DNA from: Selaginella moellendorffii
Lineage: Eukaryota > Plantae > Lycopodiophyta
NCBI RefSeq assembly: GCF_000143415.4
Contig: NW_003314289.1
Location: 383,281 to 441,318 of the forward strand
DNA: 58,038 nucleotides
Direction of reading: 5' to 3'
Shown here: one piece after another, positions 6,750 to 19,304 of the stretch
Position numbering within the stretch: the stretch's first letter is position 1
How the letters are laid out: the number at the start of each line of letters is the position of its first letter
Made by a program: the position numbers and the translations under genes
Notes under the pieces: generated by a model
What the model was told of the DNA's origin: nothing
The model's database searches: none
What the model saw: the letters and a program-made list of their open reading frames with translations, nothing else

Positions 6750-9700
6750 TAAAGGTAAACTCAATTCCATTGGCAGTATTGGATTATGACCATATAGAAG
6801 TTTATATAGTGAAGCACTAACAGAACTTTGTACCCTTGTGATATATGCATACCAAAGAGATGGCAAATAACTATCCCACTCTAAATGCTAAAAGTTCACT
6901 TACTTTACAATCATTCATTTGGAGGTTTAAATGAACTATTCCACCAAACCATTTATCTATAAATGATAAGCACTTGTGATAGTGTTATGTATCTCCAGTT
7001 GAGATGTTAAAATGTGAAATGCCTTATCCATAATGTGGGACCATTATCTGAAAAAATCCATTTTGGACAAGAATGCTAAAACACCACTTGATTAATAAAA
7101 AAGTATCTAACAACAATTGCAAATGCACTAGCAAAAACACTGACATCCATATAGCGAGTCAAGTAGTTAGAAGCAATAATAACATACTCATTACCAACAA
7201 TCAATTGTGGAAAATGCCCCATCAAATTAAATATCACGAACTCAAACAAATGGGAAATTACAATTGACTCCAACTATCCTTTTGCAACATGAGAGATAGT
7301 ATTATGAGCTTAGAACCAAATATAGTTGTGCACATGCCGGATAACATCATATTGCATCTTGCAACTCCTTAGTCACATATCATATCACATATCTAGTCAA
7401 CGGAGATCATGCACTATTGAAGATATAGGCTAATCAACCACAATCTGGATCTTTGTGGGATCAACTCTCACTCCATATATTGAAATCAAATGTCTAAAAT
7501 ATTCAATTTTCTCCAAAAAAAACTCATACTTAAATAACTTCAAGTAGAGCTTCTTATCCCTCAAATGTTGCAAAACACTTTACACATGCATCTTATATTC
7601 CTCCACTAAAGAGCTAAACACTAGGATATCATCAAAATTATCAATTGTAAACTTTCCCGAGTAAGGTTGTAGAACTTGATTCATCAATCTCTAAAAAGTT
7701 GTAGAAACATCTATCGAACTAAATGACATCACTAAAAACTCATAGTGACCCCATCGTCTAGAATGTAATTTTTGGAACATCCTCTGGCTTGACACAAATC
7801 TAATAATACCCTTGCCTCAAATCAATATTTGAAAAATATCAAGTATCACAAAGGTAATTGAGAAAATCATTGATAAAGGATTGGGAACATATTCTTCATT
7901 ATCTTATCATTCAATCCTTTGTAGTTCACATAGAGACACTATATACCATCTTTCTTCTTAACTATCACCACTGAAGCAACCTAAGAAGACTTGTTTATCT
8001 ATAACCACCCCTTCCAAAGGTACTTAACAAATTGCTTATTAATCTCTTTATCTTTAGTAGGATTAATATGAGTCAATTGTCACTAATAAGGAGTAGCTCC
8101 AAGAACCAAATCAATCTCATGTTGAATTCCATGTTTGGGAGGCAAACCATCAGGCAATTCATCTCGAAATACATCTAGAACTCCTCTTAAATGCAATCCA
8201 TCTAAGCCCCATGCCCATGAACATATGCCAAATTAGATATGAGCATATTAGAAAGAAACAAACCACAAAAGAACTAGTTATCTCATGTGTGCATGTTACC
8301 AACTCCAAAGTATTAATCAATGAAGTATCATTATTGTCTGTTATGACAATCTTTTTCATAGTGCCACTAATTTCGATATGCAGAACATTTAAACTCTCAA
8401 TTGATCCTTGGCTTCACATCATAAAACCATTCCTTCCCAAGAATAACATCTGTGTGACCAAGATCTATAACCTGGAGCAAAGGATGGTCAAGAATCCCTT
8501 AAATCATCAAAAGAACACTCGGAGCCTATTCACCGTAAACATAAGTGTTAAATCCATCTACCATAACCACCTCATAGATTACCAAACTCTTTTCCACAAG
8601 CAAACCAAGTTACTTCACCACCTTGAAGCTCAATAAGTTGTGTGTAGCACCTAGATAAAAAAGAATACTAACAACACTACCCTGAATGTCCCCTTTGACC
8701 TTCACAAGTTAATTGTGCATAAAACCATTGAGCTCTACAGAATTGATATACACTTGAGACTTAAATTTTTGAACTTTTGCCACAAGGTGTGAAAGAGCCA
8801 CCACAACAAATGCCTGAGTTGTATCCATGATAAATTCCACCACCTTAATATTCTTTGATCCCTTTATAAGAAGACAATCCTTGCTATGATGTCCAGCTTT
8901 GTGATAATGAAAAAAATTGCCCTCTACCTTATCCTTCTCTTGCTAATGTAAACAATTTCTTTTAGCCTTATTGTCATCTTCACTTTTTGAGCTATGATGG
9001 AACAATTGTTTCTTCCTTGAATATGAAGCATTAGGGCTGGTATTGACTACCCTATAAATCATCCTATTGACCAGAGTTGACTAAGTTGATTGATAGTTTG
9101 GGCAAAAATATTTGAGCTTTAGTGATAGCATTAGTCAACATTGCTGGAAAATCCTTTTTACTTTTTGCTACACATCCATTGAGCTCAAATCTTTGATGAA
9201 ACATTGCACTTTTAACAACTCATTATAAATGCTCATAAGACTAAAGTAAAGATTGTGTGCATATACATCTAAAGACAAAGTCCCTTATTTGATCTCTAGA
9301 AGTTAGTTCATGAGATCAACCTCTTCAAACTTTTTGATAAACAAAGTATAGAAAATTTTAATCAAATCACTCCAAGAAGTCAACTTAGAATTAACTTAAT
9401 TTTCACCTTATGAGACCAATAACTTTCCCACAATTCCAACCAAAAATCAACTTTCTAACTATCGCAAACATTTAGTGATGACTTCCATTCCATAATACCA
9501 TAATCCTTGGCATGTTTGACGTATCAATAATAATCACAGACACAAGATTGATTCAACTCTTAAGGGTCTATGTGAAGTAAAATGTTTTTAATAAGATTGA
9601 TAGAATCTTTAACCTCCTTAATATTATTTTAAACCTTAGATATTTGGCATCACAACAACATTATCAAGATTCTTCCTCTTTGTTATAGCAATCATCACTA

Positions 9701-9775
9701 ATGCCATACTTCTCATCAAGATTTATATCCCACTTATCTGCCATCCCAAAAGAATGTGCTGCTCCAATACTAACG
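6750..9775 (-). mobile_element. Decayed Ty3/Gypsy element(s): gag, protease, RT and an integrase-core fragment
   Basis: Degenerate tRNA-iMet PBS (minus tagtattggagc versus TGGTATCAGAGC, 9761-9772). RT remnants at 7480-8200 (FDDI). Integrase-like LMGHFP...GNEYVIIASNYLTRY at 7076-7273. Confidence 0.85.
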
Positions 9776-10402
9776 AAACTAACAAGGAATGAACCCAACC
9801 CTTGAACAGGCCATGGAATATTCTTAAAATATTCTTGTAGTTTATGTCATCCCTTATTTTAATGGATTATCTGCCACAAATTCCATAGTACATCTACAAC
9901 AAGCTACAAAGTAGGCCAACTAAGCTTCTGGCCAGCACAAAATTCTTAAAGCCCTTTATAAGACAAATTATCTTTCTTTACTTATTAAAAAGAATAGTTT
10001 CTTATGCCAGATGTGGCTGCAAGTGTCGTCTTATATTGCTGGCCATGTGGAATATAGATGAACCGTTGTAAGATCCTCACAAAGGATCGAGTCCCTTCGT
10101 TGGAGGAAGAGATGACCACCTGACACTCCCTTGCCCTTGCCCTACAGCCCTTCATTGCACAAGTTGTCGGATGGCCACTGATCCACTCTTTTCCTGTATT
10201 TGTTCATTTGCAGCGCATCTTTGGTGTTGAATTGTGACCTACTTTGGAGTTAAAGAAAGACAGACTTTCCATCTTGGAGCTGTCTTGCTTACACATAATC
10301 AGGCATTTAGAAAGAGCTGCCTCCTTTGCTTAACAAATGCATCCTTGTCTCTGGAGCTTTGCTTTGCGATTCCAGTCGCTTTAGCTCTTTCTTTTCGCTT
10401 GG

Positions 10403-13400
10403 TCAAGTTCCCACCACAAGGCCGAGAGCTCCCACTGCGGCCGCCTCGAGCTTGGCGTCTCGAGGAGGGCCTCCTGCCTTCAACGAAGCTCCAGCTCGAC
10501 TACACGACTGTAAGATGGCCACCACTTTTGGAGCGAGCACAGGGAAGGTGGTGGCAATCTCTGCGACGGGTTGCAAAATCTGCGCTAAGAACTCGCTGCT
10601 GCCAGCGACCTTGGACAGGATGTATGTGACATGAGAGACTACCTGAGGCACACAACACAGATTGCTTGTATCAATGAAAACAATGTGTGGATAATTGCCT
10701 ACCCTCTCTGCCACTTGGAAGCTTAGATTGGCTTCGGGATAGCAGCGAGTGACGTGCGAGGCGAGAAGGATGGCAAAAACTTGTTTGTGTTGCTGCTGCT
10801 GTTGTAATAACTCGTCTAGAAAATCAAGGCAGTGGACCATTGCAGGGACATGCTCTAGCATCACCGGTATACGCGTTGAATCATATCCCTGCAAAATATT
10901 TCGAAATGTGCATTGTAGAATGAAACGGGATAGGGAAAAACTTGCCTGGAAATGTATCAGCTTCAGAAGTAGAGAGTTCACTGTAAGAAGTGATGACACC
11001 GTCTTACAAACAAGCTTGTTCATCGCCATCGACAAAGACTCTTTCCCCTGGCTTAAATCACAACGCTCCAGTAGAATCTGGCAGACAGCGCTGCATGCAC
11101 ACAAAATTACTCTCTCGAGAAAGAAAATTGAAAACTATAAACTATACCTGTATTGAGAAACGAGTGCCGTGGCGATTTCTTCACGCCTCAGGCCATCTTT
11201 CCCAGACTCCAATATCGATGCCTCGCACAGCCTCCTGTTCACTATCAGGATCTCCATTAGCGTGTCCAAGTAAAACGCTAGCATCGGCGTACGAAAAAGC
11301 CTCGGGTCGCACGATAAGAAAAGCAAGGGATCCCGGACCAAAGTTCTGTAGCTCAGTAGCGCGTCTTCCTTCAAGAGACCAGTATAGGCCGAGCCAGAGA
11401 CCTTAATCGCTTTGAAGAAGACTATGATCAGAGGCTCCTTCGCAGCATCTGGCAAAGCGTACCACCAGCTACAAAACTTTGCCTGTACGTCATGCGGGCA
11501 CGTTGGGTCCAATAAAAACGGCAGCAATTCCTTGATAAGAGTGCTCTCTAGCGTCCAGTAGCTGGGCTTTCCAACCACGTCTGTCAACTTCCAGTCATAG
11601 CTAGAAGCTCGCCGACGCATTCCGTCCAGAACACGGAGAATAAGTTGTGGTTCGCTTGGAGCCTTCTTTCTTGCCGATTGAATTGCGTCCACTGATAAAG
11701 AGTCCCTGTCTGCCGCATGTTCGTCGGTCATTGCGACGTCGACGCCTACCGTATCAATAAGTCTGTCCGTTGCTTCCATTTGGTCAAGATGGTTGAGTAC
11801 GATGAACTTTTCAGGGAAGAGTGCAGTTGCGAGAGCGAGCCACTAGGAGCAGCAGATACAAACGTTAAAGGCTTCTAGCATGAATTTGACTTGGTGATTT
11901 CTTACCTGAGGAAGAAGATTTTCGTATTGCGACGAGAACTTCTCCATGTACGAGAGCACCAGCCTCCAAGGTGTACCTGAGACCAAATCCGGCCACCATT
12001 TTACATCGTCGTCAACACCCAAACTTCTGAGGAGGTGTTCTCTGCAGAGAATGAAGTATGTCGCGAGAACTGCCGGCGCCTGATCGACAGCTTCCCCCAG
12101 ACCTATTTGCAAGAGAGCGAGCTAATGACATGAATAATCTGGAAAAGAATCTCACCATCATCCGAACAGTTGTTATAAAAAGACAAGCTGCCAGGAGATA
12201 TGGCATCCAATAAGAACGTCTCCAGCTCGACCGCTTTGAATATAGGGCCTTTGGCATTTCCTTGTTGAACCGGTAAATCCATATAAGATTGGATCAAGTG
12301 CACTACCTCCTAGAATCGACGCAAAGCTTGTAAGACAAAAAAGAAAAGAAAAATAAAGACTCTAGAGGCCAACTTACACGACAAACAGGCTCGCGTGCTC
12401 TTGAAATACTGTGTATTACTGCACCTAGGATGTCCGTGAAGCACCGACTGAACGTACCCGCGTGAAGTAGTTGCGTGAGACACATTAGTGCACGACTCTG
12501 TTGTTTCCTGCAAGAATCAAAAGTCAGTCAATGAGAAAGGTAAATGGTGATTTGATTACACGTTCCCAGCAAGAGCACCTTGAGGCCGAAGTGCAGCAAC
12601 GGCATTTGCAATCAGCGACGGGTCGGACGTTATTCCAGCAGCCGACGCAAAATCATGCATCAAACCATGGTGCACTGTCACGTGGATTCCAAGTGACTCC
12701 CTAACAAACTGCCACACAGTAAGAGCATAGAATAGAAAAGACGCGCGTACTGGATTTACCTGGGCTATGTTGTTCAAGTTTCGTAGAAATAGCTGCACCG
12801 ACAACCATATGGCAAGCTCCACAGTCGATGAAAAACCGCTGTCTTGCTTCACGGGTGAGAGCAAGTACGACACACATCCATGGTACAGCAGTCTCGTTGG
12901 GCTTCCAGCTAGACCTGGTACCAAACATAAATATGCAACTCCAAGTTCGAGAATACGTTGCGAACAACAGGGTGGCTTTGTTTTGTCTTGCGCAATTGTT
13001 TTCAACCAGAAATCACTCTGCAGCCATGGCGAAAGATTAAGCCAGAACCAAAACAAGAAAGAAAACTTGAGTACCTCTTCAAACGATGGCGAGATGTCTC
13101 CAACTCGAATCAAGACACAATATATCTTCAAGTGTGCATATAGCTCAGGACACCATCCTTTTTTCTGTTTTATCCTCCTCGCATGCCTCAGCAAGGCCTT
13201 CCTGAGCTCGCAAGTCACCCATTCCTTGTTAACAAATCTTTCGGATGGCGTCGAGAGACCCTCCTTGTCGGTCATACGCGGAAGTGGCAGCAAACTTTTC
13301 TCTCTCGACGATAGATACTGCGCCAACCATGGCAATAAGCTATGTACCGTTCCACCAAGTGTAAAGCTCTTGAACAGAACTTCTGATAGGAACTCGAACT

Positions 13401-14332
13401 CGTCGTGTAAAACCTCCAGAGTCACCAGTAATGCCAGCTCCTCGAGAACCATTGCCTCCACCATCGCGTCTCTGCAAGTCGAGGCGAACGAACGAGAGAC
13501 CTGACAAAGCTTGAACAGCGTCCACACAGCGGCTTCCATCTCGCGTGACGGCTTTAAACGAGGCTCAGCAGGCGACTTTTCACGGGCTGACTCTTGATCT
13601 AACTCCCGTTTCACGAGGTCCACCAGGAGTGTTGGAGCTCGCTCGACCAGCGATGGATTGTTTGCGAGCGTTGTGACAAGAAGCTCTATGCCACAGGCAG
13701 CAGTCAGCAAGCTTTTGACGAGTAGCTCTGCAGAAAAAAAAAAACATTGAATGTGAGCGAGAGAAGAAGAAAAAAATTCAACCTGGAGTGAAAATTGCTG
13801 GACAACGTGAAACAGCGATTGGAAGAAGCAACCTTAGCTCGGATAGATATGCCGTGTTATTCCAAATACTGCCCATGCTGGAATTCGAGGTTGCTTTTGA
13901 AGCTCTTCCTAGCAAGGATGTTATAACAAGCTCAACGCGCCCTTTCTATAAAAAAAGAGACGATCCATCAAAAAGAAGGAAGACATCCTTTAAAACTTAG
14001 AAGATTACCTCAGTAGCCTGCTCAAACGCCAGGCATTCGTCCGGACTTTCCCCGCCATCGAGCAATCCATCTTCGTCCATAGGCGCGGCATTCTCGGCTC
14101 CGGCACCGATATTACACGAGATCTCCCCGTAATCCAGCCGCGCATACTCGAGCGCTCGCGAAACGCACCTGTGATCTTCCAAATTCCCCAGCACACAATG
14201 CCGCTGCTCCGGATCATCGCACGCTGCAAGTAGAAGCGAGGGAGCGAATGGCAGCTTCACGGACGCATCGATGGCGCGCAGGCGCTCGGGGAACACGCGA
14301 TGGCGCACGAATTCCAAAATATCGTCCGCCAT
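10403..14332 (-). CDS. INTS2: Integrator complex subunit 2 homolog (multi-exon)
   Basis: Blocks match remembered animal INTS2: AFEQ...RVELVI, LLVTTLANNP, LKIYCVL...PSFEE, VRDPLLFLSCDPRLFR, REEIATAL, LIHFQGY...VPAMVHCLDFLDELL...KQVFAILLASH. The blocks are separated by short GT-AG introns. Internal exon boundaries are approximate. Confidence 0.88.
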
Positions 14333-14986: not shown

Positions 14987-15586
14987 ATGGTATTGGCGAG
15001 AGCTTCCGAGCCGCGGCCATGTCTCATCCCACCCGATCAGCGCCCCGAGCACGAAGGCAAGCCAACCCTAGTTCTCGACATGAATCACACGCTCGTCTCG
15101 AGCGTCACAAGCCCCGACCAGAGGTACGACTTCGTTTCCAAAGTCCGTGGATCCGATGGCACACTTCTCACTCTCAAGCGCCCCTTTGTCGACGATTTCC
15201 TCCGCCAAGTGGCCCGTGTCTACGAGATCGTCGTCTTCACGTCGTGCGACCGGCGCATCGCGGATCCGATCCTGGACGAGCTCGACCCCGAGGGAAGATT
15301 GTTTGCGCACAGATTGTATACCGAGCATTGCAGCTGGAGCAGCGAAGTTGGGCACGTCAAGGATTTGTCGATGCTGGGGCGGGGGATGGAGAGGGTGGTG
15401 ATTGTGGACGACTCCGAGTCCAAGTGTGTGTGGAACCTGGATAACTGGGTGCGCGTTTCGAGCTTCTGGGACAACCCCGATGATCGCGAGCTGCTGGACC
15501 TCGTCCCGTTTTTGCTCGGGCTTGCGAAGGTCGAGGATGTGAGGCCGGTTGTGAGGAAGTGGCGACTACAAAACTTCCGCAAATAA
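14987..15586 (+). CDS. SCP/FCP1-like (NIF domain) HAD-family CTD phosphatase-like protein, intronless, with DxN instead of DxD
   Basis: PTLVLDMNHTLV, KRPFVDDFL, YEIVVFT, DPILDELDP, RLYTEHC, VKDLSMLGR, VVIVDDS, DRELLDLVPFL...DVR. Confidence 0.92.
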   Translation: MVLARASEPRPCLIPPDQRPEHEGKPTLVLDMNHTLVSSVTSPDQRYDFVSKVRGSDGTLLTLKRPFVDDFLRQVARVYEIVVFTSCDRRIADPILDELDPEGRLFAHRLYTEHCSWSSEVGHVKDLSMLGRGMERVVIVDDSESKCVWNLDNWVRVSSFWDNPDDRELLDLVPFLLGLAKVEDVRPVVRKWRLQNFRK

Positions 15587-15744: not shown

Positions 15745-18700
15745 TCAAATATTCCTTGTCAGACCTTGAAATCCATCATCGTCGTCACTTTCTTCCCACT
15801 CTTGCACAATCTGTTCTGCTTCGTCTAGTTTTTCACAGCCCGAGATCTTCAAGTGTGTGATTGTGGATAGAGAACCTCTGTCAATCTGGATCAAGGATGG
15901 TAGATTCTTCAGCGAAAGGCGTTCAAGTCCGTGCATGGGAGGAACTCTTTGCAGCTGCTGACAGTCCGAAATGTACAATTTTACCGCACAGCTTTCCTCG
16001 ATATCGACCAGAAATGGCAAACTCTTTAGTCGAAGTTCCGTCATCCCAGAAATGGAGGGAACCCTGTGCAACTTCTCGCAGTGCAAGATACTCACCCTTG
16101 ACATGCTGTAACCTTGTCCAATCTCGACTAGAGATGGCAAGTTCTTTAAGACAAGCCGATAGCCTTTTGCATGATCTGCCGTGGTGGCATTGAGAGATTG
16201 AGCTGGGAGGCTGCGCAGCTTCTCACAATCCGATACTATGATCATTTCGAGATTTTTGGACGGCATAATGGCACCAATCTCCACCAAAGATAGTAATGCC
16301 ACCAGTTCAATCCTCGTGACTGTAGAAGGAAGAGCTGGAACGCTGTGCAGCTTGTCCGGATCTGAAACTGCCTCTGGATCAGATTGCATATTAATTCTTG
16401 ACAAATATGGTAAGTTCTGCAGCACAAGCTCTTTGAGTGATGGCAATCTAGCTGAAATGCTGTGCAGCATCTCACAATGTAAGATCGTCAGTCGTTCCAG
16501 TCTTGGCAAGAACATGTCATTAATCTCCACCAAAGATGTCACCTTGTCCAATGAGAGCTTACGAAGCATAGGAAGAGCTTTGGGAAGCTTTTGTAGCAGC
16601 AGCTTCTCACACTCCATAATGTGCAGCATCATCGAGGTAGAGAAATCAATCAAATTGAAGATGAAGATGGATGTCCGTTCCCCCAGTGTAAGGTTGCCTA
16701 TCACTGGAATGTCGTCTATGCTCTCACGCGTGGAGAAAGAAAGATCTCGGCGCAAGCTTTTTCCAACATAAACCTCTTGGATCAACCCACAGTTATCAAT
16801 AATAAGATAATCAATGAATAACTGCTCGTCGATTTGTCTTAAAGCTGGTAGTGGTGAATCCAGGTGGACAACAAGCGGTCTCGTGGATTGTACGTGGGGA
16901 AGCTGAGCCAGCTTTGGACAGTCTGAAATGCTGAGGCGCTCAAGCCGTGGGAAGGATACTAAACCATCTTGAAGAGCAGAGTCAGGAATGCGTTCCATTG
17001 TAGGACAGCCCGAAATTTTAAGCTGCCGGAGGTTGCAAAGCCTGCCCAACCGTGGCACTTCTTCCAGCACTCCACAACCGTCTAATTCCAGGCTCTCCAA
17101 GTTCTGAAGCTCTTCAAAGCTGGGTGGTAGGGATTTTGACGCAACCATGATTTGCAAGCTAGTGAGACGTGGAAAGTTGATATGGCACGGCAGCTCTGTA
17201 AGAATAATAGCTCCAAGATGTAGCATTGTTAGCATCTTAGACCCACTGAAAGTTTTGAATAATTCCAGTGCGTTTTTGGAGAGAATAAGATCTTCTTTAG
17301 GACACCTGAGTTTCCCGTCGTATTTGACATTCAAATGTTTATCTTCAAGTCGTAAAACCTTCAGCTTTCTTAATTTCCTCACAAACTCAAAGTTTACCAC
17401 TGAAAGTTTGTAATAGTAAATGTATAATTCGCTCAGGTTATGCATCCCATGCAGAAAGCTGAGATCAATAACGGCATCCGCTTCTCTGCCCCGTAGTACT
17501 ATTCTGAGTGCCTCTAGCTTAGAAAGCTTCCGAAGAGCATTCCACAAGCCACTACACCATGACTCCAAGTGTAAGTACCTGAGCTCCAGAAGTTTCCCCA
17601 GAAAAGATTCCGTGAAAGTTGCCACATGACAACGCAGGAACCTAAGCGATGGAGTTTCAATGAGAGGCTGGGAAGTAGTCTTATTGACAAGCACAATCTG
17701 TTCAGCATTGGGTTGACTTAAAACTAGATATCCTTGAGTGTCTCTGCAAATCTTTAAAGTGGTAAAAAATAATGGCTCGATGTCTATGATGTAGTCAGCA
17801 AAACTCATCATAAGATCGTCGACAACGATTTGATCGCCCCACTGCCGCTGCCCAAACGATGCATCTTCTAGCCTGCAGATGGCATCGTTGAATTTATGCA
17901 ACTCAAAACAAAGGTTATCGTCTTCTGAGCACCTCATTGCTCGCCACAGGTGAAATAAGCTCGATTCATCCCAGGGATCTCTTAACAGGGCGAGGGACAA
18001 AAAGAGCAGCTGCGCATCTTCGTCCAGCTCCATAAAACTCAGTTTCACCATTTCAAATATGCCCTTCCATTCATCCAGTTCCCACCTGTTGATCTTCTCA
18101 AGAAGACGCTGCCAATAAAACCAAGGACGATCCTTGTTTCTTCTCATATATCTGCCCATCACCTGAAGAGCCTTGGGAACTCCATTGCACAGCCAAACCA
18201 CCTTCTCCACATAATCTCTATCAAGGGTGTCTGGGACCTGGTCTTCTCCTCCAAACGCTTGCATGCAAATGAGTTTGTAGCCATCATCAAAAGACAAAGG
18301 ATCCAACTTGACACTAGTCCACCTATCCTCTGGAAATAGCTTGGCATTGCTGGCGATGGCCACCACCTTGTTCCCCCTCCCCATGTCACCTTCCTGATCT
18401 AAAAGATGCAGCCAGTTCTTTTTCCATACATTGTCCAGAACAAGCATGTATCTCTTGAGGCTGCTCCTGGTTATAAAGTTGAAAATCTCCCTGCTTCCAT
18501 TCGCAACCGATGCTACCCTCCGATCGTTCCCTGTCAACCGAGAAAGTATGTCTGCTTGCATAGTGACCAACGTATCGAAGCGCTCTCTGTAATCAAAACT
18601 GATCCAGATGATGCCATCAAAATGACTGGCGATCTCCCCGTCGCGACACAGATGAGTCACCAGGAACGTCTTCCCAACGCCGCTCGGGCCAAACAAGCCA

Positions 18701-19304
18701 ATCCTCTCTGGCCTTCCCTCGTCCAGAAGCAGTGACTTGAACCTGGAAAACTCCTCGTCTCTTCCAACAATCAAGTAGTTTATGCCTGGAGGAAGACTTG
18801 GGGGCTGGCAGCGATAGTGAAACTCATGGGGCGGCCGAGAGCCCAAAGCCTGGATTTTCTGAGAGTGGACTAGAGGCAAAGGCCGCTCGAGAACTTGCTG
18901 GGCGTTTAAGATAGGCATCAAGCTGTCGAGTTTAGATCTGGCGCCGAAGAAGCGGAAAATCTCCCTGATGTATCTACAATAGAGTGATGTTTAGTGTTCC
19001 AGAATTTTTCCAGATGAGGATGTTACCTGGGATGAGCTGAGTGGACGTTCTTGATATGCTGCTCCATTTCATTGAAACAATCGCAAAAACGAGTGAGTGT
19101 TTGATATTCATCCGAAGCATGATCTTGTACGGCCGCAATACGCATAAGTGCAAGATTGTAGATAGGCGTGTACTCGGTAATTGCAGCCTTGGACGCGCTT
19201 GGGAAATTCCAGTACTTGGAGGCCCCGGATATGAGGAGCTTGAAAGCTTCGTTGATAGGCACGGCAATGACCGCTGGCAACACGGACGTGGGATCGAAAG
19301 ACAT
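15745..19304 (-). CDS. NLR immune receptor: N-terminal helical (CC/RPW8-like) domain, NB-ARC, long LRR; 2 exons, about 1170 aa
   Basis: P-loop GPSGVGKT, kinase-2 LVLDNVW, GVPKAL, many LxxLxLxxC LRRs. A 53-nt GT-AG intron (18974-19026) joins exon 1 (MSFDPTSVL...HPR) in frame to YIREIFRFF... Confidence 0.93.

What the first reader, a model, noticed from the sequence alone, without database searches (positions are those of the whole stretch)
10403..14332. Full-length Integrator subunit 2 in a land plant
Seen: collinear N-, mid- and C-terminal blocks matching animal INTS2 in an intron-rich intact gene. Known (from memory): the Arabidopsis snRNA 3'-processing DSP complex contains homologs of only some Integrator subunits (INTS3/4/7/9-like plus a CPSF73), and no INTS2 was described. 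Inference: non-seed plants may keep a more complete, animal-like Integrator backbone that was lost in angiosperms, possibly with INTS1/5/6/8 and PP2A-coupled Pol II termination.
Basis: partly seen in the sequence, partly recalled or inferred. Interest (0 to 1): 0.72.

Follow-up and report, generated by a model that had tools for sequence, protein, structure and literature searches.

The report
Spikemoss Integrator subunit 2 gene
This is an intact, expressed 12-exon gene of the spikemoss Selaginella moellendorffii for Integrator subunit 2, a scaffold of the RNA polymerase II termination machine; public databases already name it, and related genes also exist in conifers, Ginkgo, water lily and lotus, so flowering plants as a whole have not lost it.

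Summary
Window 10403-14332 (minus strand) is exactly the coding sequence of Selaginella moellendorffii XP_024536342.1, which RefSeq already names 'integrator complex subunit 2' (1097 aa, 12 exons, 11 introns of 51-68 nt). The protein matches Pfam INTS2 nearly end to end (250 bits, E 5e-74). Human INTS2 is its only hit among solved structures by sequence, and human INTS2 chains are its best fold matches by a wide margin. Transcript-like contigs from four studies carry all 11 splice joints.

The literature does describe the Arabidopsis DSP complex with only INTS3/4/7/9-like subunits plus CPSF73-I. But INTS2 orthologues occur in green algae, a liverwort, lycophytes, ferns, gymnosperms and two angiosperms, Nymphaea colorata and Nelumbo nucifera. 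Their tree follows the species tree. So there was no loss at the base of seed plants or of angiosperms.

No other angiosperm orthologue turned up. That fits later losses within angiosperms, but my searches were not sensitive enough to prove absence.

The scan has separate notes on INTS1 and INTS5 genes elsewhere in this genome; I did not test them. Overall this is an already annotated, ordinary orthologue with a modestly interesting, unpublished taxonomic distribution.

The parts
14009..14332 (-). Exon 1, with the ATG at 14332; codes aa 1-108, an N-terminal region conserved among plant orthologues
   Evidence: Exact spliced mapping of P0001. The joint 13945/14009 is seen in 4 runs.
13783..13945 (-). 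Exon 2
   Evidence: joints 13945/14009 and 13727/13783.
13075..13727 (-). Exon 3; holds the N-terminal/middle INTS2 block, Pfam model positions about 217-356
12760..13017 (-). Exon 4
12560..12708 (-). Exon 5. The productive donor follows 12560. An alternative donor follows 12579; it removes 19 nt, shifts the frame and meets a TAA after 8 codons.
   Evidence: One search gives the model. One search shows joints 12506/12559 (X1, X2) and 12506/12578 (X1, X4, X7). The frame was read from the sequence.
12378..12507 (-). Exon 6
12156..12309 (-). Exon 7
11906..12102 (-). Exon 8
11148..11842 (-). Exon 9, the largest exon (aa 677-907); Pfam INTS2 model positions about 698-873; used as the query of the exhaustive search
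10946..11090 (-). Exon 10, followed by a GC-AG intron (10889-10945)
   Evidence: One search shows the donor GCAAGT. In one search the joint 10887/10945 allows a shift of up to 4 places, and a shift of 1 gives CT..GC on the + strand.
10703..10888 (-). Exon 11, with the conserved HFQGYD block
   Evidence: Canonical GT-AG placement of the joint follows (cut +4).
10403..10642 (-). Exon 12, with the stop codon TGA at 10403-10405; C-terminal INTS2 block up to Pfam model position 1047

Best explanation
The locus is the Selaginella moellendorffii orthologue of Integrator complex subunit 2 (INTS2). INTS2 is a roughly 1100-residue all-helical solenoid. In animals it forms, with INTS1 and INTS7, the 'backbone' on which the endonuclease module (INTS4/9/11) and the phosphatase module (INTS6-PP2A) are mounted next to RNA polymerase II.

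Shown here: the gene is intact, spliced and transcribed; it is homologous to animal INTS2 along its whole length in sequence and predicted fold; and it was inherited vertically through green plants, including gymnosperms and at least two angiosperms.

Inferred: the protein acts as a non-catalytic scaffold of a plant Integrator-like complex. In that role it would bridge an INTS1-like protein and the INTS7 homologue (DSP1 in Arabidopsis) and so support co-transcriptional cleavage of snRNA precursors and possibly promoter-proximal termination.
For: Pfam INTS2 scores 250 bits, E 5e-74, over model positions 97-1047 of 1050. By sequence, the only hit among solved structures is human INTS2, at E 1e-14 for the single protein. 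The plant profile scores E 2.5e-59 in three collinear stretches, covering human residues 80-666, 849-964 and 988-1134.

The AlphaFold model has mean pLDDT 77.7 and is all-helical. Its five best Foldseek PDB matches are all human INTS2 chains (E 1e-24 to 1e-16, TM about 0.45). The next matches are generic solenoids at E 2e-5 or weaker and TM 0.2 or below.

The 12-exon model is exact, and contigs of four studies carry all 11 joints. A second haplotype copy is 99% identical and also intact.

Orthologues occur from a prasinophyte alga to angiosperms, and their tree follows the species tree. RefSeq already names the protein 'integrator complex subunit 2'. The backbone role of INTS1/2/7 is taken from PMC10511320.
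Against: There is no functional or interaction evidence for any plant INTS2. The one plant complex characterised, Arabidopsis DSP, was described without INTS2, so a plant snRNA 3'-end machine can work without it.

In two of the four runs, the only contig assembled across intron 5 carried the frameshifting splice form, so part of the transcript pool is non-productive.

I did not verify that partner subunits are present in this genome. Identity to human INTS2 is low (16-18% in the structural alignments).
Confidence: 0.85

Rival explanations
1. The protein is a true INTS2 homologue, but in plants it has been repurposed as a helical scaffold outside an Integrator-like complex. This would explain why many angiosperms can dispense with it while keeping the DSP complex.
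For: The Arabidopsis DSP complex works without a described INTS2. The stem branch leading to the angiosperm copies is long, 0.94 substitutions per site. Their Pfam scores are lower, 155 and 94 bits against 250.
Against: Conservation is highest in the same C-terminal blocks that are conserved in human INTS2. The whole solenoid is retained rather than a single domain. The scan also notes INTS1 and INTS5 genes in this genome (untested).
Confidence: 0.1
2. The gene is a decaying relic on its way to loss: transcribed but no longer making a functional protein.
For: A frameshifting alternative donor in intron 5 appears in 3 of 4 runs, and in 2 of them it is the only assembled form. The gene appears rare among angiosperms.
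Against: The 1097-codon reading frame is uninterrupted in both haplotypes, with only 7 amino-acid differences. The productive splice form is assembled in full in run X2. The protein has the highest Pfam INTS2 score of all plant sequences tested.
Confidence: 0.03
3. The gene is an animal or protist contaminant in the assembly, or a horizontal transfer.
For: None beyond the family being best known from animals.
Against: The introns are short (51-68 nt). The gene sits on a 1.97-Mb contig, between a plant-type NB-ARC/LRR gene and a NIF-domain gene. It is present in both haplotypes. The tree follows plant phylogeny.
Confidence: 0.01

Closest known systems
Human INTS2 (PDB 7CUN chain B, 7PKS, 7YCX, 8RBX, 8RC4)
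   Same: Same Pfam family across nearly the whole model, and collinear sequence alignment over N-terminal, middle and C-terminal regions. The all-helical solenoid fold matches INTS2 chains far better than any other solved structure.
   Different: Identity is only 16-18% in the structural alignments. The protein has 1097 aa against 1204. Global TM is about 0.45, so the predicted relative placement of the sub-domains differs from that in the solved complexes. No evidence exists for plant partners.
RefSeq XP_024536342.1 / XP_024522922.1 'integrator complex subunit 2 [Selaginella moellendorffii]'
   Same: XP_024536342.1 is identical to the protein encoded in the window. The other record is the second haplotype, 99% identical.
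   Different: Nothing; this is the existing public annotation of this very gene. The older GenBank records EFJ23308 and EFJ05404 call it a hypothetical protein.
Arabidopsis DSP complex (DSP1-4 plus CPSF73-I)
   Same: It is the plant counterpart of Integrator for snRNA 3'-end cleavage. DSP1 is the homologue of INTS7, which in animals is the backbone partner of INTS2.
   Different: It was described without any INTS2 (or INTS1/5/6/8) homologue. The Selaginella gene shows that this reduced set is not a feature of land plants in general.
Uncharacterized proteins LOC104586155 (Nelumbo nucifera) and LOC116250992 (Nymphaea colorata)
   Same: These are angiosperm orthologues carrying the Pfam INTS2 domain (155 and 94 bits). 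They form a clade inside seed plants.
   Different: They are unnamed in RefSeq and more divergent, with a long stem branch. They are only 28-29% identical to the Selaginella protein.

Membership tests
Integrator complex subunit 2 (Pfam PF14750, INTS2) | Significant match to the family profile above the curated cut-off, over most of the model | tested here: met
   250 bits against a cut-off of 25, E 5.2e-74, protein residues 100-1071 on model positions 97-1047 of 1050. Separate exon ORFs hit collinearly.
Integrator complex subunit 2 (Pfam PF14750, INTS2) | Animal INTS2 is the best, and only, match in the reverse direction | tested here: met
   Against all PDB chains the only sequence hit is human INTS2, at E 1.2e-14 for the single protein and E 2.5e-59 for the plant profile.
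Integrator complex subunit 2 (Pfam PF14750, INTS2) | Long all-alpha solenoid fold like that of INTS2 in Integrator-PP2A structures | tested here: met
   The model has pLDDT 77.7 and is all-helical. The top five Foldseek hits are INTS2 chains at E 1e-24 to 1e-16 and TM 0.43-0.47; the next hits are at E 1.7e-5 or weaker and TM 0.2 or below.
Integrator complex subunit 2 (Pfam PF14750, INTS2) | Orthology: vertical descent, one copy per haploid genome | tested here: met
   The tree of 13 plant and algal sequences follows the species tree. The two Selaginella records are 99% identical haplotype copies.
Integrator complex (functional membership) | Physical association with INTS1 and INTS7 in a Pol II-bound complex | not testable with these tools
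   This needs affinity purification or co-expression. The backbone composition is known only from animal work (PMC10511320).
Integrator complex (functional membership) | Partner subunits (INTS1, 5, 6, 7, 8, 4, 9, 11) encoded in the same genome | not tested
   Only unverified scan notes exist for INTS1 and INTS5 on other pieces of this genome.
Integrator complex (functional membership) | Required for snRNA 3'-end processing or Pol II termination | not testable with these tools
   No plant INTS2 mutant or assay was found in the searched library.

The most novel reading that the evidence does not exclude
Green plants inherited an animal-like Integrator backbone (INTS2, probably with INTS1 and INTS5). 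It is kept from algae through bryophytes, lycophytes, ferns and gymnosperms, and into Nymphaeales and Proteales. It was then lost several times independently in other angiosperm lineages, including the one leading to Arabidopsis. On this reading the Arabidopsis DSP complex is a derived, stripped-down Integrator and not the plant norm, and Selaginella, liverworts or even lotus would be the right systems for studying full Integrator function in plants.
Probability: 0.45. Interest if true: 0.5.

Novelty: already known. Interest (0 to 1): 0.3.

Why it matters
The gene itself is already annotated, so its existence is not news. What is useful is a correction to a common picture. The plant snRNA 3'-end and termination machinery is described from Arabidopsis as a five-subunit 'small Integrator'.

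This locus and its orthologues show that the INTS2 backbone subunit is widespread in green plants and persists in at least two angiosperm lineages. Any reduction therefore happened inside the angiosperms, not at the origin of land plants, seed plants or flowering plants.

If the patchy angiosperm distribution holds up, it is a natural experiment on which Integrator modules are dispensable. It also points to tractable non-flowering models for testing backbone and PP2A-linked functions in plants, such as Marchantia, whose relative Riccia has the gene.

Tried and rejected
1. Word-index protein searches for angiosperm relatives. I tried the Nelumbo full-length protein, an 11-sequence plant alignment and the conserved C-terminal region of Nelumbo. 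They returned only Nelumbo, Nymphaea and one gymnosperm-like transcript. They even missed members of the query alignment, and one search missed Nymphaea. I therefore treat them as weak evidence of absence.

2. ESM Atlas look-alikes. These confirmed the INTS2 family but gave no plant taxonomy.

3. Literature. Ten searches found no paper on a plant INTS2. One search was wasted because 'INTAC' matched 'intact'. The only plant mention is a Pfam INTS2 hit reported within a Fragaria vesca KNAT6a gene model (PMC12300509), which I could not check. It may be a fused gene model or a chance hit.

4. The 49-55-aa metagenome proteins that share a 90% cluster with a Nelumbo isoform. Their sequences do not look like INTS2, so I did not count them as further angiosperm copies.

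5. Unnamed Logan, JGI and ENA fragments from the exhaustive search. By BLAST all are closest to liverwort, lycophyte, fern, gymnosperm or algal sequences, and none to the angiosperm pair.

6. Contamination and pseudogene readings, rejected on genomic context, the intact frame in both haplotypes and the tree.

Full report
**What is in the sequence**

On the minus strand between 14332 and 10403 there is a chain of open reading frames. Three of the six frames I scanned separately hit Pfam PF14750 (Integrator complex subunit 2) in collinear order, at model positions 217-356, 698-873 and 877-1047 (E 0.012, 3.4e-10, 2.3e-18).

I used the largest clean exon (window 11150-11842, 231 aa) as the query in an exhaustive HMMER search of 1.84 billion representative proteins. 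That search returned a 1097-aa protein with 100% identity (P0001). A cluster look-up identifies it as XP_024536342.1, 'integrator complex subunit 2 [Selaginella moellendorffii]', on a 1.97-Mb contig. A second record, XP_024522922.1, lies on another contig. Older GenBank entries call the protein a hypothetical protein. The two RefSeq proteins differ at 7 of 1097 residues, so I take them to be the two haplotypes present in that assembly. That last step is an inference from my own knowledge of the assembly.

**Gene model**

An exact spliced mapping of P0001 onto the window gives 12 exons totalling 3294 nt including the stop. There are 11 introns of 51-68 nt. The start codon is at 14332 and the TGA stop at 10403-10405. 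Ten introns are GT-AG. Intron 10 (10889-10945) is GC-AG, with the strong GCAAGT donor.

**Expression**

Twenty public runs from 10 studies hold half or more of the sampled words of the stretch. The best hold about 0.7, which is close to the exonic share. I laid contigs of four runs from four different studies on the stretch. All 11 joints appear at exactly the modelled positions, and one contig (X2, 3465 nt) covers the whole coding sequence in spliced form. The runs are not on record as RNA, but contigs that lack all introns can only come from spliced transcripts.

One alternative event was seen. In intron 5 a donor 19 nt upstream (exon 5 ending at 12579 instead of 12560) occurs in three runs, and in two of them it is the only assembled form. 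Reading the sequence, this shifts the frame and meets a TAA after eight codons, so it is a non-productive isoform. Contigs cannot give its abundance.

**Family membership**

- The full protein scores 250 bits (cut-off 25), E 5.2e-74, against Pfam INTS2 over model positions 97-1047 of 1050.
- Against all PDB chain sequences the only hit is human INTS2, at E 1.2e-14.
- A profile of 13 plant and algal orthologues hits human INTS2 at E 2.5e-59. The three collinear stretches cover human residues 80-666, 849-964 and 988-1134.
- An AlphaFold2 model built with that alignment has mean pLDDT 77.7 and is all-helical.
- Its five best Foldseek matches in the PDB are all INTS2 chains of human Integrator-PP2A structures (E 1e-24 to 1e-16, TM 0.43-0.47 over the full length).
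- After those come generic solenoids such as karyopherins, CAND1 and Tra1, at E 1.7e-5 or weaker and TM 0.2 or below.

Every sequence- and fold-based criterion for INTS2 is met. Physical membership of a complex cannot be tested here.

**Likely function**

In animals INTS2 forms the backbone of Integrator with INTS1 and INTS7. The shoulder (INTS5/8), endonuclease (INTS4/9/11) and phosphatase (INTS6-PP2A) modules are arranged around that backbone (PMC10511320). The most likely role of the Selaginella protein is the same non-catalytic scaffold role in an Integrator-like complex at RNA polymerase II. This is an inference from homology; nothing here tests it.

The scan's own notes record an INTS5 gene in this genome, followed up as an expressed 13-exon gene, and two INTS1 candidates. 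I list these as leads only.

**The evolutionary claim**

Liu et al. 2016 searched Arabidopsis for homologues of Integrator subunits and reported DSP1 (INT7-like), DSP2 (INT3), DSP3 (INT4) and DSP4 (INT9), together with CPSF73-I (PMC5079582). [quoted passage not shown] I found no paper in the searched library that discusses a plant INTS2.

The inference that the subunit was 'lost in angiosperms' and kept in 'non-seed plants' does not hold as stated. The exhaustive search found 20 clusters at E below 1e-3. The named ones are:

- Riccia sorocarpa (liverwort)
- Diphasiastrum complanatum (lycophyte)
- Ceratopteris richardii and Adiantum nelumboides (ferns)
- Ginkgo biloba and Taxus chinensis (gymnosperms)
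- Nymphaea colorata and Nelumbo nucifera (angiosperms)
- Spirogloea muscicola and Cymbomonas tetramitiformis (green algae)

All the full-length ones I scanned carry Pfam INTS2, at 94-230 bits. The Nelumbo gene spans 31 kb of a 1.46-Mb Nelumbo scaffold, next to a Trm112-like gene, and it has four RefSeq isoforms.

A maximum-likelihood tree recovers ferns plus seed plants (96/98), seed plants (100/99) and a Nelumbo plus Nymphaea clade (100/100). The stem leading to that angiosperm clade is long, at 0.94 substitutions per site. An unnamed transcript groups with Taxus and another with Riccia. So INTS2 descended vertically into flowering plants.

**How far loss within angiosperms is supported**

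No other angiosperm cluster appeared. By BLAST, every unnamed fragment from that search is closest to bryophyte, lycophyte, fern, gymnosperm or algal sequences. A word-index search with the full Nelumbo protein found only Nelumbo, Nymphaea and a gymnosperm-like transcript. Flowering plants dominate public plant sequence data (my own knowledge). Given that, this result is suggestive of widespread loss or strong divergence within angiosperms, and it fits the failure of Liu et al. to report an Arabidopsis INT2 homologue.

It is not proof, for three reasons. The exhaustive query was a single 231-aa Selaginella exon, and it scored only E 2e-10 and 6e-9 on the two angiosperm proteins. The library collapses relatives above 50% identity. 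The word-index searches demonstrably miss relatives at 30-40% identity. One paper reports a Pfam INTS2 hit inside a strawberry KNAT6a gene model (PMC12300509), which I could not examine.

**Surroundings**

About 650 bp upstream, on the opposite strand, lies an intronless NIF-family (CTD-phosphatase-like) gene at 14987-15586 (Pfam NIF, E 2.6e-49). Its catalytic motif reads DMNHT instead of DxDxT. Beyond it is an NB-ARC/LRR resistance-type gene at 15745-18921. These place the INTS2 gene firmly in plant genomic context. The pairing of an Integrator scaffold with a CTD-phosphatase-like neighbour may be coincidence.

**Verdict**

However, the gene is already named in RefSeq and its domain is precomputed in public resources, so it is already known. 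The interpretation needs correcting: the backbone subunit is not confined to non-seed plants and was not lost at the base of the angiosperms.

The remaining open and moderately interesting question is whether it was lost repeatedly within angiosperms, making the Arabidopsis DSP complex a derived minimal form.

Noticed in passing
window 12560-12579 (minus strand, end of exon 5): An alternative 5' splice site lies 19 nt upstream of the productive one. It shifts the frame and gives a TAA after 8 codons. It appears in contigs of 3 of 4 runs, and in 2 of them it is the only assembled form, so it may be regulated unproductive splicing.
   Followed up: partly
window 10889-10945 (minus strand): Intron 10 is a GC-AG intron with donor GCAAGT. 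It is confirmed by spliced contigs in all four runs.
   Followed up: yes
window 14987-15586 (+): An intronless NIF/CTD-small-phosphatase-like gene (Pfam NIF, E 2.6e-49) sits head-to-head with INTS2, about 650 bp from its ATG. The catalytic DxDxT motif reads DMNHT, with the second Asp replaced by Asn, so it may be an inactive phosphatase. Its adjacency to a Pol II termination scaffold may be chance.
   Followed up: partly
window 15745-18921 (-): A 1058-aa uninterrupted ORF with NB-ARC and RPS2-like LRR domains: an NLR-type resistance gene.
   Followed up: partly
P0031/P0036 (Nelumbo, Nymphaea) in the tree: The stem leading to the angiosperm INTS2 copies is long (0.94 substitutions per site, against 0.21-0.32 for the gymnosperm tips). 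Their Pfam scores are the lowest among the seed-plant sequences scanned. This points to relaxed or altered constraint before the apparent losses.
   Followed up: no
L003 7-156, L004 64-213 (JGI metagenome contigs): Several 49-55-aa metagenome proteins share a 90% cluster with a Nelumbo INTS2 isoform, yet they do not look like INTS2. They may be a repeat-derived or mis-annotated exon in one Nelumbo isoform.
   Followed up: partly
window 8000-10000: The region downstream of the gene is AT-rich (GC 0.32-0.34, against 0.47-0.54 across the gene) and has a strong negative GC skew. I did not examine it.
   Followed up: no
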